A DNA stretch of 64,000 bases from Ostrea edulis (GCF_947568905.1 NC_079165.1:105648001-105712000); one strand, 5' to 3'; shown: positions 1-6,409, counted from the stretch's first letter. Numbers and translations: made by a program. Notes: generated by a model from the sequence alone, not told the origin.

Positions 1-1
1 T

Positions 2-955
2 AAAATGTGTAAATGGGGTCACAATACATGTTGGAGAATTTCAAACTGTGATACTGAAATTAAATTGCTGAAAAGTACATCACAAGATCATCGTTATGCA
101 TACATGATATTAAAATTTATATCTGAAACAATATTCTCGGGATATATTCAGGATGGTAGTATTCCAACAACCTATGAGATTAAGATGGTTGTTTTGCATC
201 ATATAAACACTTGCATAAACACTTGCAAGATGTGTGCTTTGCCCACCTGCATTCAAAGACTTCTACATGATTTGGCTACCAGTTTTTCACAACAGTCTCT
301 GTCACATTTTGTCAATGGATCCAATTTGCTACAAGGAAACACACGGGGAAAGCTACCGGTGCAAAATAACTCATGGCATAGAAATAGATGTTTAGTTGTC
401 TCAGAATGTTTTTACTTTATTCTTAAACTACTGGGTACCAAGGAACAGTATACTGGGAAAACCTGTATGAAACTATTGAAATATATTGGTAAAACATTTC
501 ATCTTGCTTGGTCTCAGACAGAAGTTGATCCAGTTTATAGCGTTGATCAAGAAAAATTAAAATCTTCCATTACAACCATGTTGACCAAGTTGCACAGTGC
601 AGATCAGGATGATGAAAGTGACTTTTTAAGTGATGCTAACTTTTCATCTTTAATCATAAAGCAGTCTTCTCCCATAAAACATTGGACAAGTGATATTAAG
701 GTGTGGGAATATGAAGGTGTTCGCGAGATGTATCAGAGACATCATTATGAATGCCCTGACCCACCTGGAAAAAGTGTCACACCAGAGGAAAAAATTTTAA
801 TAGAGGCACAGATGTCTTGTGGTTTCCATTCTTGGTCTCATGAAGAGCAAGAAAAATGGAAAACCAAGCTTACTAACAGTGAAGATCCAAATAATATTGT
901 GACTGCATTGAGAGCAGTAGATATGTATTATATGGATATAAAAAAAGAAAACTAA
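2..955 (+). CDS. Mab-21/cGAS-like receptor (cGLR) family protein, C-terminal part; ORF open at the left window edge
   Basis: Motifs in Mab-21 C-lobe order: WRISxxxxE (cf. WRLSFSxxE), YMILKFI (cf. xxLLKxL), TTYEIKMVVLHH (cf. SSYHLKTxLFH), CIQRLLHDL, LSHFVNGSNLL (cf. LPHYFxPxxNLL), then ~205 aa of unrecognised extension. Stop TAA at 953-955. The catalytic N-lobe is outside the window. Confidence 0.8.
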   Translation, partial: KMCKWGHNTCWRISNCDTEIKLLKSTSQDHRYAYMILKFISETIFSGYIQDGSIPTTYEIKMVVLHHINTCINTCKMCALPTCIQRLLHDLATSFSQQSLSHFVNGSNLLQGNTRGKLPVQNNSWHRNRCLVVSECFYFILKLLGTKEQYTGKTCMKLLKYIGKTFHLAWSQTEVDPVYSVDQEKLKSSITTMLTKLHSADQDDESDFLSDANFSSLIIKQSSPIKHWTSDIKVWEYEGVREMYQRHHYECPDPPGKSVTPEEKILIEAQMSCGFHSWSHEEQEKWKTKLTNSEDPNNIVTALRAVDMYYMDIKKEN

Positions 956-1070
956 AAGGGATGACATTTAGGGAGAGTGATCTATATGACATAAACAGAC
1001 ATTCTGTGTAATTCTATGTACCTTGCAAGGTCCAGCTTTGGAACCAGATGATAACTATTTTGAGGATTAA

Positions 1071-1577
1071 AGGGACTGATTCACGATTTCCCCTCAAATT
1101 TTGTTTTTCACTTTAAATGATCAAAATCTATAGTCTAATATGTTTAGAAGGTTTCACAAAAAAAATTAAGGTTATTCATCAAGACAGAAGCTCATTATAG
1201 AGAGTTTATTATTTGTTTTGAAAACAAAGATTGAAGTGTGTTATTGTTTACGAAGTTTTCAAAATAAAGGGATATTGATCCAAGTTTATTAGATATATCA
1301 CATTTCAAGTAAAAAGTATCATTTAAAAGGTAAAATTTGTGATTGTACAAAATGAAGATGGTTTAAATTACAAAAATTAATGTTTCACCGGTTTGTTTGT
1401 TTACATAAAAAGACTCGAGTCTTTGTTTACATAACACAGAACCAAAGCTAAGATACTGCTCTTATCCTTGCATTCAGACGGTCCAAATTTTGGTTGTCAA
1501 CAATAAATGAGTTATATTTTTAATTTTTAACATAAAAAATGATAAACATTTCTTTCAAAAATCGTGAACCAGTCCCT
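1071..1577. mobile_element. Non-autonomous TIR element (MITE) with TTAA target duplication, Kolobok/piggyBac-type
   Basis: TIR AGGGACTGATTCACGATTT vs reverse complement of AAATCGTGAACCAGTCCCT (18/19). TTAA at 1067-1070 and 1578-1581. Confidence 0.85.
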
Positions 1578-2674
1578 TTAAATGAGCTGAATTACAAAAA
1601 AAATTGATGTTCTGTATTTCCGATCATAATTCATGTTGAAGACATTGATCTGAATAAGATCTAGGTATACAGTATCAGTCTGGGAGTCAGAATGTCATTC
1701 GTATTTAAAGGTCAGGAAATAATGGAGAATTTGATCAGTAAATGTCAGCTGAATTAGGCATGTAAACAGTGATGATTAAACATAAACAGGCCTCCAGTTT
1801 ATTGTCTACCTGGTAATTTAGGGTGTAGATTTAACTTTCATTCATCTAACATGGAAAAGATACCCCTACTCAAAACAAAATAGATTGTTTAAAATCATAT
1901 TTATTTATTTCTATAGTATCTCCCTTCGTAGTATTTTTCTTGTGCTTTAGTGTATGTTCAAACTAAAGACTTGGTATGTCACTATCTGACATTTTTGATC
2001 CAAAAAATATTTTGCTTATTTAGTATATGTACATGCAAGTCAGAGGGGAAACAAACCAAATTTTAGTTAGGCTTAGCACTCAAATACTCTTGATGATATC
2101 TTGCATTATTATTGATTACCAAATTATTTTTATATTTCATTTTATGAAATTATACAATTTGCATGCAGATTGCAACAAATTCATAAAGGAGTTATTTTGA
2201 TCATACAAAAATATGAGTCTTTTTTAAAAAAAGATTTCATAAATTGATACTAATGGGAAGCAAACAATATTTTGATTTAGACCAGAGATTTCAATTTCTA
2301 TTGACATTATATTATTTTGTCATGTTTCAATACATGTACTTCACTTCCTAGCTATTTCAATGCTTTACTTTGTGATGGCATTTGATTTGCATGCTATATA
2401 TAATAAATTATTACTAAGGCTATTATGAATGTATGAAGAATTTGTTTTTTAAAATATCTTGTATAATTTGATAGGGACAGTTAGTAAACAGGGTAAAGAT
2501 ACAGTAAATGTAAATATTGCACAAGTCAAATTAGATGCATATCTAGATGTTGTAAATAACAAATGTTTTGAAACAAGAGGTAAAATGTATCTCCCAGTAA
2601 GGCTACCCACGCATAGTGATATTCTGACATATTTGATGATCTTGATTGTATATCCATGTGTTAGGTTCTCCTAG

Positions 2675-2808
2675 GAAAGGTCTGAGTGCAGCTACAGACC
2701 ATGAGGAACCCAGTGACAACAAATCACGCCATGAGGCAATCCCCATAGAGGTCAGCAACGCTAAGCTGGTTCTGTCTGGAGGAGAGGGATATGTGGACTT
2801 CAGAATAG
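2675..2808 (+). CDS. MAPK8IP3: JNK-interacting protein 3/4 (JIP3/SPAG9, Sunday driver/UNC-16), penultimate coding exon
   Basis: Acceptor ttctcctag|G and donor ATAG|gtcaga. Translates KGLSAATDHEEPSDNKSRHEAIPIEVSNAKLVLSGGEGYVDFRI(G), matching the JIP3/4 hallmark LVxSGGEGYIDFRIG. Confidence 0.9.
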
Positions 2809-3368
2809 GTCAGATCTGAATTACAATGATAGTAAACGAGTACATACACTAATGATGCATTTCAAATCAGCAATTTATCTTTTGCACACCGATATAGCAC
2901 TTGTGTTTATTTTAGTATACCGTATGTTGTGTCCTATCTGTTAAAGATGTGTATCGAAGTGGAAATTTATGTGTCAGCATAATCTAAACTTTACATTCAA
3001 TTACCCAGTACATCTATTGGGTATTTGATTTAGATATAGCCTCTAGTTCTAATTATGACTGTGTAGGAGGAATTTGTTGGAGTATACCCCCTTGGTCTCA
3101 AGACTTTTTTGGAAAATAAAAACTGAAACCAAAGGGTTATTCCACAACAATTTCTACAAGTTGATTATTTTCATTCTACTATGGTGATGTTTGTATCATG
3201 TGCAAAGTACAGTTCTTAATTAGAAGACTTGCAGCCATTATATATGTCAAGGTATAAAGTCTCCAATAAACCTCTTGACACGATGATTTTTTGACAACAA
3301 GGGGTTGATGGAAAATTGAACACTGGTGAACTATTGCAGAATATTTCAAATGTGTAATTCTGTTCTAG

Positions 3369-3472
3369 GTGATGGGGATGATGATAACCCAGAAGAGGAA
3401 GAGAAGAAGTTGTCACTTAGCAAAGGAGACAAGAGCCACCTCATTGTATGGGAAGTGAACCACAGCAAATAG
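3369..3472 (+). CDS. MAPK8IP3: JIP3/4 terminal coding exon
   Basis: Acceptor tctgttctag|GT, phase 1, compatible with the previous exon. Translates (G)DGDDDNPEEEEKKLSLSKGDKSHLIVWEVNHSK*, cf. the vertebrate JIP3 end DGEDDE...LSKAERSHIIVWQV. Confidence 0.9.
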
Positions 3473-4441
3473 TCTCATAGAATCCAGGCCACAAGGTCAA
3501 GGACAATGTACTCCTCAAATGTCAATGTATTACAAATGCTCTATGTATGCATACATTATCAATGAATGTATCATGCTTTAGGTCATATGCTTGACCTTAA
3601 TGGAAAATGCTGTTAAGTGCATATTCTTACAGCTGCTATACATGTAAATATATTACTACCTGATTCTTTGAGGTGGTATGAAAGACCAGGCTTTGTGAAG
3701 AATGCAAATATGTACGAATGTGTCAGTACATCAAAAGTAACTGTTATTGTTGTTTTGTAAGTGGTTTTGTTACCAGCAAAAGCATTGATTTATCTTAAGA
3801 AATATGATATTTCTTGGACTCTTATTATTTACCCATGTAAAAGTTAGAGGACTTCGAAAAAAATAAATAGAATATATGGCATTTCTGTTTATTTCATACT
3901 TAGTTCAATCCTTATATCTCTCATTCATGTGCAATATATATCTTGTTGACCTTTCAAATTTTATTTATCGCAATTTTTAATGTTACATGTGTTTATTTAT
4001 TAATCAATCCCATAGAAAATGTAACCAGAAAGGAATTTTCTTCTTAAAATAGGAAGTTGATGTCTGATTATGTAAATCCTCACTGTTTTAATGATTATGA
4101 CACATCCAGTTGAAGGCCAGCTTGTAGCAGTCTTTTGTAAGAAATCATTTTTATTTATTATTCTGTTCACATTTACACCTTGACAGCACCATTACTCTTA
4201 GTTTTTATTTTGTTGATTCTATGTCATGTTAAAGTGTACTAGATCCGAGTGTGCTGTTAAGTATAAGCACTGTTTGTTAGAACTGTGGTGATGTCATCTG
4301 TTCCTATTAAAAATTCAACAACAAAGCAGGAAACATATCAAATTTCTTTGGTACTGAGACATTAATTTTGAATACATGTATTTGTTTTGAAAACGTGTGT
4401 TTATTTTGAATACATACATTTATTTTGAATCAATTATTTTG

Positions 4442-4447
4442 AATAAA
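4442..4447 (+). terminator. Candidate poly(A) signal of JIP3/4 (alternative AATAAA at 3862-3867)
   Basis: AATAAA followed by a U/GU-rich tract, about 1 kb after the stop codon. Confidence 0.3.
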
Positions 4448-6409
4448 TTTGCATTTTAAATAAGTTGCAACAGTTGGTTATGTAATTTTTTTTCTGTGTT
4501 TTTTAAATACTATTTTATTCATTAAGTGTGATATTTCCAAGTTTCCTGTCTATATTTGAATAGAAAAAATTGTTAAGGAATTCAATAGTTATTGGATTTA
4601 AAATCAATGGAAATATTTTTCTTCGGATGGAGATGTTTAGTGAAGTCTGTAATGGTGTATTCATCAGGTATTAATTTTTTGACAGTGTCATTGTGGATAA
4701 GTTTTTTTTTTTACACAAATGGAACCCAACTTTGTTTTAAGTATATTTCCTTATTAATTAAGCAATGGAACACAAAACTCAATAGTCAAGTGGCTTAAAC
4801 TAGCTTTTGAAAGGTTTCTGGTTCAGATATCAGAACAGTCTCTTCATGTTTCATGTTGTTTACTTGGACAAGCTATTTATCTGCATTGTCCAAGCTGAAA
4901 GTGGATACCAGTTCTGACTAAAGGATTCATTTATGCTTGACTTTTGTCTTTCCAGGTGGCATTTATGAATCTCATCCACCTGTTATATTTATGGTCCTTA
5001 TGGCCAGGGGAAAAGTTAGTCTAGTGATAATAAGCAGTTTCATGAAGGAGTATTATGTTAAGCATAAATTGCACATTAAGTTACAACATTTAATGTGCAT
5101 TTCTTTTACAAAGTTGTATCATTAATGAAGAATATTAATGTGTGTATGTTGTCAGAGCATGTTTAAGATACTAAGCTTAATTTATGATAAACATGAATAA
5201 AGCTGCAAATTCATTGTTGGCGTTCATTGCATTGTTATTCATATATTTTCCCAATCCCTTCACAGTGATGACTGCAGAAAATACCCTATTAGAGAATGTC
5301 CTTAGACTGCTGAAGTTATTTTGGGCAGTGTAGCTTTCAATAAGTAAGAGTACAAATGTAGTTCTATTGTAAACTAAATGATTATTATGAACCTGTACTT
5401 GTGTATATTGCTTTAACTTTTCTTCCAAGTGACATTGTCATGCTGCTTCAACTTTTCTTCCTAGTGACATTGTCAAATGACCTAGGAACAGGGTCATGAC
5501 ACATAATTTTGATAGTTACATTGATGGAATGGTCTTGTTTCAACAGGGTCATGACAAACTTCTGATCATAAGCAATTAATGTTTGTGCTAAGTAGGTGCT
5601 TCTAATGTCTCTTCACTACAAAGTTTTGGCTCTGACAGTTTATATGTTTTTACCCTTGACCTTGGTTTAGGATTAGCATAGAGTAAACCCATCTATGTGA
5701 TAAGTGACCTTGAGGCTTCTGCAATTGCTCCTGCATTTCAAAGTCATCCTAAGTACAGATGGTTAAAAAGATATATTGAGAAAGAATACTATTCTTAGTT
5801 ATGTCACATTGCTGAATTGTGGAAGTAGGCATGTAAAACTTTTCTTCAATAAGTTGCATTTACTTTCAACATTTTGGGAAACAGTTTGGTTAAGACTGTT
5901 AAAGAAAATTGTAATGGAAAAAGGCAAGAATGAATTAATGGTAGTTTTTGACATGAAACATTTCCTCCTTTTGTAGAGTTATAAAAAGTTTCTTCAACCA
6001 TTCATATGTTGCTTGTAAAGCAACGATTGGCCAATGAAAATCACTGAACATTTATTTGGCTGTCATATAATTATGATAGTTTAATTCATGTAGTATGGTA
6101 TCTTTTCAAAAGCAAAAATATAGAACTAGACCTACACAACCTAGTCAAAAACGCCAAAACTAGCAGTAAGATTTGATACTTTGTCTCGAGGTCCTTTTCA
6201 AAAAGGGATATTGATCTCTTGACCTTGAACCTAAGTGACTTGAGCGACTTCAGTACTGAATTTTTTATAAAGATATTGCATTACCTAACACCCCCACCCC
6301 CATTTCCCATGAAACTGACAACAGCTGTTCGTCAACTTAATTCACTTAGTACCCGTTTCTCGAATGGAGTAGCGAAGTAGTCTTATTATCAGAGATAAGC
6401 AACCCTTAC

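What the first reader, a model, noticed from the sequence alone, without database searches (positions are those of the whole stretch)
2..2674. cGAS-like receptor ORF apparently nested, same strand, in an intron of the conserved JIP3/4 gene
Seen: a 950-nt uninterrupted ORF with Mab-21 C-lobe motifs precedes the last two JIP3/4 exons, and I found no earlier JIP3/4 exon between them. Known: bivalves have large, fast-evolving cGLR expansions; cGLRs are nucleotidyltransferase pattern-recognition receptors making cyclic dinucleotides; the Tyr and Lys of the SYHxK motif are kept here as TYEIK. Inference: it is either a nested immune gene hosted by a housekeeping locus, or an alternative terminal exon giving a JIP scaffold-cGLR fusion. 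The CxxxCxxC cluster (HHINTCINTCKMC) and the ~205-aa C-terminal extension are not familiar to me.
Basis: partly seen in the sequence, partly recalled or inferred. Interest (0 to 1): 0.75.

Follow-up and report, generated by a model that had tools for sequence, protein, structure and literature searches.

The report
Divergent cGAS-like gene nested in JIP3/4 intron
The ORF is the 3' half of a complete, intronless, 590-residue cGAS-like (Mab-21 fold) gene that sits on the same strand inside one intron of the oyster JIP3/4 scaffold gene; it is a real, conserved but fairly ordinary nested gene, and it carries an unexplained C-terminal domain found only in a few bivalves.

Summary
Window 2-955 is the last 954 nt of a 1,773-nt intronless ORF that starts 817 nt left of the window (G000:C2:105647183-105648955, +).

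- **Protein:** it has the missing N-lobe, with invariant G55-S56, E76-F77-D78 and D239. It passes Pfam Mab-21_C narrowly. Its AlphaFold model matches cGAS (VIA Z 21.7) and an oyster cGLR (Z 20.9).
- **Nesting:** RNA contigs splice the JIP3/4 exon ending ...FFVSVPG, 209 nt upstream of the ATG, straight to window 2665, and then 2808 to 3369. The ORF therefore lies wholly inside a 3,691-nt intron.
- **Conservation:** contigs from three other oyster-like sources (57-62% protein identity) show the same nesting. The scallop orthologue is free-standing.
- **Selection:** dN/dS is about 0.2 in both the core and the extension.
- **Fusion:** an in-frame TAA two codons before the ATG and the absence of any splice joint into the ORF argue against a JIP-cGLR fusion.
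- **Expression:** independent transcription is suggested, not proven.
- **Extension:** the 205-residue C-terminal extension has no relatives outside this orthogroup among 1.84 billion representatives.
- **Cys cluster:** part of the "CxxxCxxC" cluster is a private 12-nt duplication.

Verdict: a divergent, single-copy cGLR-like variant, of moderate interest.

The parts
1..955 (+). 3' 954 nt (frame from base 2) of the 1,773-nt intronless cGLR-like ORF. The full ORF is G000:C2:105647183-105648955, so the ATG lies 817 nt left of the window. Stop TAA at 953-955.
167..349 (+). Mab-21_C (HhH/H2TH-like) domain match, residues 329-389, including the invariant Y331/K334 (TYEIK) and SLSHFVNGSNLL.
203..226 (+). 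INTC-INTC, a 12-nt tandem duplication (residues 341-348). It is absent from all orthologues and from the close relative's RNA contig (12 nt left out at L017:2203).
338..952 (+). C-terminal extension, residues 386-590. It is conserved and under purifying selection, with no Pfam family. Residues 393-472 are modelled as helices with confidence; the rest has low confidence.
1067..1581 (.). MITE-like repeat in the same intron. It has 23-nt terminal inverted repeats with TTAA at both outer ends, and at least 40 copies at 81-96% identity in the genome. It is not part of the gene.
1..2664 (+). In-window part of the 3,691-nt JIP3/4 intron (L017:974-4664, GT..AG) that hosts the ORF.
2665..2808 (+). Penultimate JIP3/4 coding exon (SPRKGLSAAT...GGEGYVDFRIG).
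3369..3472 (+). Last JIP3/4 coding exon (DGDDDNPEEEE...SHLIVWEVNHSK*). The 3' UTR continues beyond it.

Best explanation
This is an independent, intronless, protein-coding gene for a divergent cGAS-like receptor (Mab-21 fold nucleotidyltransferase). It is nested on the same strand inside the intron between the third-last and second-last coding exons of the JIP3/4 (JNK-interacting scaffold) gene. Shown here: the complete ORF; the cGAS/cGLR fold; the invariant G-S loop and the E76/D78/D239 acidic triad; purifying selection over the whole length; the position inside the intron; and conservation of that position in contigs from three other oyster-like sources. Inferred: the protein is an active nucleotidyltransferase that, on binding an unknown ligand, makes a cyclic di- or oligonucleotide read by one of the genome's STING homologues. 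Its near-neutral pI (6.6) argues against a long basic nucleic-acid groove. The Cys-rich insertion of about 70 extra residues within residues 84-232, or the orphan 205-residue C-terminal domain, may do the sensing or the regulation. It is probably transcribed from its own start in the ~210 nt between the JIP donor site and the ATG.
For: The ORF runs 590 aa from a conserved Met, preceded by an in-frame TAA. It passes Mab-21_C at 25.0 bits against a 24.1-bit cut-off.

Fold: the AF2 model has pLDDT 69.7 and pTM 0.71. Foldseek's top PDB hit is mouse cGAS at E 2.5e-10, followed by the Tribolium cGLR. VIA-align gives Z 21.7 (rmsd 3.6, 308 aligned) to cGAS and Z 20.9 to C. virginica cGLR1, 8gjw.

Motifs: G55, S56, E76, F77, D78, D239, K274, Y331 and K334 are invariant in 8 homologues down to 26% identity.

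Selection: dN/dS is 0.21 (own vs L025) and 0.22 (L021 vs L022), and is equal in the core and the extension.

Nesting: RNA contigs of two runs join L017:973 to 4665 and 4808 to 5369 with GT..AG ends. Contigs L021 and L022 keep the order JIP exon then ORF, and L024 keeps JIP exon - ORF - two JIP exons.

Expression: in run X1 every 200-nt bin across the ORF has depth (2.6-14). About 1.2 kb of the non-repeat intron (L017 1-400 and 3601-4400) has depth 0, although two intronic contigs, at 595-750 and 4538-4692, reach depth 5.7 and 10.3. RNA-Seq run X3 holds ORF nt 2664-2946.

Copy number and pathway: there is a single copy in the genome. STING ligand-binding domains occur at three loci.
Against: No PF03281 (Mab-21 NTase) hit for this protein. 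Only 2 of 8 relatives reach E 0.003. Profile-profile comparison with the genome's ordinary Mab-21 paralogues aligns only 51 columns. The gap from D78 to D239 is 160 residues, outside the X50-90 criterion used to curate cGLRs (PMC9980059). MiD51, which is not a cGLR, scores nearly as well structurally (Z 20.6), so the fold alone does not prove catalysis. I could not measure the triad geometry. In run X10 the ORF's depth (3.9-6) equals that of the surrounding intron (3-6.8). The X3 contig ends at an A-rich tract, which could be internal oligo-dT priming. No canonical AATAAA lies within 110 nt of the stop. A separate transcript is therefore not shown.
Confidence: 0.72

Rival explanations
1. It is a real nested gene, but the protein is a non-catalytic or non-cyclic-nucleotide Mab-21 protein. 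It would act as a scaffold or nucleotide-binding regulator, like MiD49/51 or MAB21L1/2, or like the crustacean Mab21 proteins reported to activate IKK-epsilon outside the canonical sensing paradigm.
For: MiD51 matches almost as well as cGAS (Z 20.6 vs 21.7). pI is 6.6, unlike the nucleic-acid-sensing cGLRs with pI above 8.5. The triad spacing falls outside the published criterion. The gene is single-copy and slowly evolving, unlike the expanded immune cGLRs. A precedent appears in the abstract of PMC12928593.
Against: MiD51 and MAB21L lack a full acidic triad (background knowledge). Here G-S, E-x-D and D are invariant across 8 sequences at 26-82% identity, which is hard to explain without catalysis.
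Confidence: 0.2
2. It is an alternative terminal exon. JIP3/4 exons would splice into the ORF, or read through into it, giving a JIP scaffold-cGLR fusion protein.
For: Same strand, and only 209 nt downstream of a JIP donor site. A promoter of its own has not been demonstrated.
Against: There is an in-frame TAA two codons before the ATG, and the frame is closed upstream. No joint ends inside the ORF in any of four runs, while the 973 to 4665 joint is carried by contigs of depth 120-146. The N-terminal helix starts at the conserved Met in all orthologues, including the free-standing scallop gene.
Confidence: 0.03
3. It is an untranscribed relic (a retrocopy or decaying insertion), and the RNA signal over it is only JIP3/4 pre-mRNA.
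For: The gene is intronless. In X10 the ORF depth equals the intron depth. A more distant homologue (L026) carries a frameshift.
Against: The 590-codon frame is intact in contigs from four further oyster-like sources (L021, L022/L023, L024, L025) and a scallop. dN/dS is about 0.2. Indels between close relatives are in frame, such as the 12-nt one. In X1 the coverage is enriched over the ORF.
Confidence: 0.05

Closest known systems
Animal cGAS-like receptors (cGLRs): mouse/human cGAS, Tribolium cGLR (7lt2), Crassostrea virginica Cv-cGLR1 (8gjw)
   Same: Bilobed Mab-21 fold (Z about 21). G-S activation loop. E-x-D plus a third Asp on the central sheet. The YLVPK...WRIS and Y-x-x-K C-lobe motifs. 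Intronless, like most Mab-21 genes of this genome.
   Different: Only 12-17% identity. No PF03281 hit. About 70 extra, Cys-rich residues lie between the second and third catalytic acids (a gap of 160 residues against 50-90). I saw no cGAS-type H-x5-CC-x6-C zinc ribbon, by eye and from my memory of the cGAS sequence. pI is near neutral. It has a 205-residue C-terminal domain with no relatives elsewhere. It is single-copy and conserved rather than expanded.
MiD49/MiD51 and MAB21L1/2/MB21D2 (other Mab-21 fold proteins)
   Same: Same fold (MiD51 Z 20.6). MB21D2 is the only PDB sequence-profile hit (E 0.35, C-lobe).
   Different: Here the full acidic triad and the G-S loop are invariant. There is no transmembrane anchor and no MID51-like_C match.
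Nested (intron-hosted) genes of animals
   Same: A short intronless gene lies inside an intron of a larger, conserved host gene. This is the commonest form of gene overlap (abstract of PMC5174743).
   Different: It is on the same strand as the host and fills most of the intron (1,875 of about 2,320 nt in L024). That leaves only about 120-210 nt for a promoter, so coupling to host transcription is possible.

Membership tests
cGLR (criteria of Li et al. 2023, PMC9980059) | Predicted structural homology to cGAS | tested here: met
   Foldseek E 2.5e-10 to 4k96_B. VIA Z 21.7, rmsd 3.6, 308 residues aligned; Z 20.9 to Cv-cGLR1.
cGLR (criteria of Li et al. 2023, PMC9980059) | G[S/G] activation-loop motif | tested here: met
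   G55-S56 are invariant in 8 homologues and sit directly after strand 48-54 of the model.
cGLR (criteria of Li et al. 2023, PMC9980059) | [E/D]h[E/D] ... X50-90 ... [E/D] catalytic triad | tested here: inconclusive
   E76-F77-D78 and D239 are invariant and lie on strands 73-83 and 233-246. The gap is 160 residues, not 50-90. I could not measure the three-dimensional proximity of the three acids.
cGLR (criteria of Li et al. 2023, PMC9980059) | Ligand-dependent synthesis of a nucleotide second messenger | not testable with these tools
   Needs biochemistry.
Pfam Mab-21 (PF03281 + PF20266) | Score over the gathering threshold | tested here: inconclusive
   PF20266 Mab-21_C scores 25.0 bits against a 24.1-bit cut-off, so it is met. 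PF03281 gives no hit for this protein, and the best E among relatives is 0.0027.
JIP3/4 (host gene) | JIP_LZII and C-terminal WD40_2 domains on one strand in one locus, with spliced transcripts | tested here: met
   JIP_LZII exons lie at C2:105617445-105619958, all over the cut-off, and this is the only such locus in the genome. A WD40_2 exon lies at 105639719-105639901. GT..AG joints appear in RNA contigs.
Nested gene | Whole coding sequence inside one intron of the host | tested here: met
   The intron is L017:974-4664 and the ORF is L017:1183-2955. The same order is seen in L021, L022 and L024.
Nested gene | Own transcript with its own start and poly(A) site | tested here: inconclusive
   In X1 every bin of the ORF has depth, while about 1.2 kb of the intron has none. 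In X10 there is no enrichment. Contigs cannot show ends or strand.

The most novel reading that the evidence does not exclude
The orthogroup would be a distinct, ancient (oyster-scallop), single-copy class of cGLR. Its sensing would be done not by a basic nucleic-acid groove but by the Cys-rich N-lobe insertion and/or the orphan 205-residue C-terminal domain, so it would recognise a non-nucleic-acid ligand or a host protein. In oysters its expression would be coupled to the JIP3/4 (JNK scaffold) host gene, because the gene nearly fills the intron and has almost no room for a promoter of its own.
Probability: 0.15. Interest if true: 0.6.

Novelty: new variant of a known kind. Interest (0 to 1): 0.38.

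Why it matters
Bivalves are known for very large, fast-evolving cGLR repertoires. This gene is the opposite: one copy, under purifying selection, shared by oysters and a scallop. It is so divergent that the standard Mab-21 NTase profile and the published spacing rule would miss it. It adds a conserved domain with no relatives elsewhere. That makes it a defined candidate for a cGLR with an unusual ligand or regulation, and a reminder that motif-spacing filters under-count the family. The nesting is a tidy case of a same-strand gene that almost fills an intron of a conserved scaffold gene. It is useful for annotation, because it warns against merged or missed gene models, but it is not surprising in itself.

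Tried and rejected
1. **Fusion or read-through with JIP3/4.** Rejected: there is an upstream in-frame TAA, and no joint enters the ORF.
2. **RIG-I C-terminal domain as a relative of the extension.** The PDB profile hit had E 0.37. In the alignment, RIG-I's CxxC (CRKC) falls opposite non-Cys residues of the query (vkqs). Rejected as chance.
3. **Extension folded alone.** pLDDT was 51.6, too poor for a fold search. The ESM-Atlas feature search of the extension gave only sub-threshold Mab-21_C clusters (0.76-0.79), which I did not use. The Atlas structure search with the full model covered residues 1-483 at most.
4. **Paralogues.** A protein search of the own genome found only the gene itself. 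hhalign against four ordinary Mab-21 paralogues aligned only 51 columns, so it gave no residue-level check of the triad.
5. **Mapping JIP exons by tblastx to the two other WD40_2 loci.** This was too weak. RNA joints and the orthologous contigs solved it instead.
6. **Shared synteny with the scallop.** The scallop gene lies next to an RFC1-like gene. RFC1 here is on another chromosome (C6), and there are no JIP exons within 10 kb on either side of the scallop gene.
7. **Transposable-element origin.** Rejected. Only window 1067-1500 (the end of the query) was repeated in the genome, and inverted repeats bound that element at 1067-1581. The ORF is unique.
8. **Literature.** I found no paper on a cGLR nested in JIP3/4.

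Full report
**Location and observation.** The window is G000:C2:105648001-105712000 (+) of an 895-Mb genome. Window 2-955 is an open frame of 317 codons ending in TAA. I fetched the 10 kb to the left. The frame continues to an ATG at C2:105647183, and a TAA lies two codons upstream of that ATG (TAA GAC ATG G; purine at -3, G at +4). The complete ORF is 1,773 nt, encodes 590 aa and has no intron (L001:683-2452, or L017:1183-2955).

**What the protein is.**
- **Pfam:** it matches Mab-21_C at 25.0 bits (cut-off 24.1) over residues 329-389. The window part alone scores 21.2 bits. It does not match the Mab-21 NTase model PF03281.
- **Homologues:** the word search found seven homologues. Four are full-length and oyster-like, at 57-81% identity. 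One is an Argopecten irradians protein at 34% identity with 95% coverage. Two are more distant, at 26-35%, and lack the C-terminal extension.
- **Fold:** an AlphaFold2 model built on this alignment has pLDDT 69.7 and pTM 0.71.
  - Foldseek's best PDB match is mouse cGAS (E 2.5e-10), followed by the Tribolium cGLR.
  - VIA-align gives Z 21.7 (rmsd 3.6 Å, 308 residues) to cGAS, Z 20.9 to the C. virginica cGLR1 structure and Z 20.6 to MiD51.
  - The ESM-Atlas structure search returns Mab-21 and bacterial CD-NTase clusters over residues 1-472.

The fold is therefore certain. The case for catalysis rests on the invariant G-S loop and acidic triad, which non-enzymatic Mab-21 proteins lack (the latter from background knowledge).

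**Where it departs from known cGLRs.**
- **Triad spacing:** the published curation rule is structural homology, G[S/G] and [E/D]h[E/D]-X50-90-[E/D] (PMC9980059). Here the gap between D78 and D239 is 160 residues.
- **Insertion:** residues 84-232 carry 11 cysteines and have pI 8.7. C176-x-x-C179 and C204 are invariant.
- **Charge:** the whole protein has pI 6.6. The nucleic-acid-sensing cGLRs of that paper have pI above 8.5.
- **Relation to the expansion:**
  - The genome holds at least 97 PF03281 matches, mostly intronless frames of about 700 aa clustered on C3. This ORF is not among them.
  - A whole-protein search of the genome finds only the ORF itself.
  - hhalign against four ordinary paralogues aligns only the 51-column LVPK...WRIS block.

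It is thus a separate, single-copy lineage and not part of the expansion.

**The Cys cluster.** HHINTCINTCKMC contains a 12-nt tandem duplication. All orthologues have a single copy (HHI-NTCKIC, HHIQNCETC). RNA contigs of a roughly 98%-identical relative (run X1) lack exactly 12 nt at L017:2203. Only H340, C348 and C356 are invariant, and all three lie inside the Mab-21_C match.

**The C-terminal extension (residues 386-590).**
- It is conserved in the oyster-like sequences, in the scallop and in a third lineage (P0010, 32% identity over residues 217-568).
- Its dN/dS equals that of the core: 0.22 against 0.20 for own vs L025, and 0.22 against 0.22 for L021 vs L022.
- In the full model, residues 393-472 form confident helices. 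The rest has low confidence, and the extension folded alone gives pLDDT 51.6.
- It matches no Pfam family. The only PDB sequence hit, the RIG-I CTD at E 0.37, places RIG-I's CxxC opposite non-Cys residues, and I reject it.
- A full HMMER scan of 1.84 billion representatives with the extension profile returns four proteins, all members or fragments of this same orthogroup.

It is a lineage-restricted domain of unknown fold and function.

**Nesting.**
- **Host gene:** JIP_LZII exons over the Pfam cut-off occur only at C2:105617445-105619958 (+). A WD40_2 exon lies at 105639719-105639901 (+). The host is therefore the JIP3/4 orthologue.
- **Splice joints:** I laid contigs of four runs on L017 (C2:105646001-105652000). 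Two runs (X10 and X1) carry exon-exon contigs of depth 120-160. The joints are 971 to 4663 (GT..AG with the cut moved +2, so exon end 973 and exon start 4665; 3,691 nt skipped) and 4805 to 5366 (cut +3, so 4808 to 5369).
- **Spliced translation:** it reads ...HGHRDAVKFFVSVPG|SPRKGLSAAT...GGEGYVDFRIG|DGDDD...SHLIVWEVNHSK*. The predicted ...FFVxVPG exon exists.
- **Conclusion for this genome:** the ORF (L017:1183-2955) lies wholly within one intron, on the same strand, with no JIP exon between it and window 2665.
- **Other species:**
  - L021 shows twelve JIP exons followed by the ORF, and L022 shows a JIP exon followed by the ORF.
  - L024 shows the JIP exon, the ORF 118 nt later, and then the two last JIP exons. 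Its intron is only about 2.3 kb, and the ORF fills 1,875 nt of it.
- **Scallop:** the orthologue is intronless and lies 3.4 kb from an RFC1-like gene on the other strand. No JIP exons lie within 10 kb on either side. RFC1 is on another chromosome here. The gene has changed place in one lineage; the direction is unknown.

**Is it expressed on its own?** This is only partly answered.
- **X10:** the ORF depth (3.9-6) is the same as the flanking intron (3-6.8), so this run is uninformative.
- **X1:** every 200-nt bin of the ORF has depth 2.6-14, and the listed contigs cover about 84% of it. About 1.2 kb of the non-repeat intron (L017 1-400 and 3601-4400) has depth 0. However, two intronic contigs, at 595-750 and 4538-4692, have depth 5.7 and 10.3, which is comparable to the ORF. 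The JIP exons are at about 120.
- **X3:** this small RNA-Seq run holds L017:2664-2946 without a mismatch. The contig stops at the A-rich tract before the stop codon, which could be internal oligo-dT priming.
- **Limits:** contigs show neither strand nor transcript ends. No canonical AATAAA lies within 110 nt of the stop.
- **Suggestive only:** two unrelated contigs of about 1.99 kb (L025, L026) span just the ORF plus about 100-200 nt.
- **Best evidence of function:** the intact frame in contigs from four further oyster-like sources and in a scallop, and dN/dS of about 0.2.

**Mechanism proposed.** The shown and inferred steps are kept apart in Best explanation. In short, this is a Pol-beta-type nucleotidyltransferase of the cGLR kind. 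Its triad would bind two metal ions and build a cyclic nucleotide signal for one of the three STING-LBD loci in this genome. An unknown ligand would activate it, sensed through the Cys-rich insertion or the C-terminal domain. The main rival is a non-catalytic Mab-21 regulator, on the model of MiD51 or the crustacean Mab21 proteins of PMC12928593.

**Verdict.** The observation and the nested-gene reading are correct. The fusion reading is not supported. The gene is a divergent variant of a known family in an ordinary kind of genomic arrangement. Interest is moderate. It rests on the orphan C-terminal domain, the atypical triad spacing, and the single-copy conservation that contrasts with the bivalve expansions.

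Noticed in passing
window 1067-1581: A MITE-like element of about 515 bp, with 23-nt terminal inverted repeats (96% complementary) and TTAA at both outer ends. The genome search listed 40 other copies at 81-96% identity. RNA and DNA contig depth over it runs into the thousands.
   Followed up: partly
G000:C1:67835643-67840966 (-) and G000:C2:106193879-106196745 (-): Two further loci with exons matching the JIP3/4 C-terminal WD40_2 domain (PF19056). Neither locus had a JIP_LZII hit; only the host locus has LZII. These may be WD40_2-only paralogues.
   Followed up: partly
G000:C3 (e.g. 19.6-20.0 Mb, 36.8-38.9 Mb, 41.5-44.7 Mb, 66.3-67.7 Mb, 71.3-71.7 Mb): At least 97 Mab-21 NTase (PF03281) matches in the genome. 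Most are uninterrupted frames of 670-730 aa clustered on contig C3. This is the large intronless cGLR expansion typical of bivalves.
   Followed up: partly
L026:181-1814: A more distant homologue (about 33% identity, Logan contig of 1,991 nt) changes frame between residues ~148 and ~159 of the query. Its similarity also runs past the called stop. This is either a pseudogene in that taxon or an assembly error.
   Followed up: partly
window 940 (L017:2940): The close relative's RNA contig (run X1) lacks 1 nt fifteen bases before the stop. This would change only the last few residues. The orthologues also differ in the length of their C-terminal tails.
   Followed up: no
P0001 residue 164 (outside the window, L017:1672-1674): The database cluster representative differs from this genome's translation by a single residue, V164G. 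It is presumably an allele.
   Followed up: no
L024:218-2537: In this oyster-like species the host intron is only about 2.3 kb and the nested ORF fills 1,875 nt of it, starting 118 nt after the JIP donor site. That is very little room for an independent promoter.
   Followed up: partly
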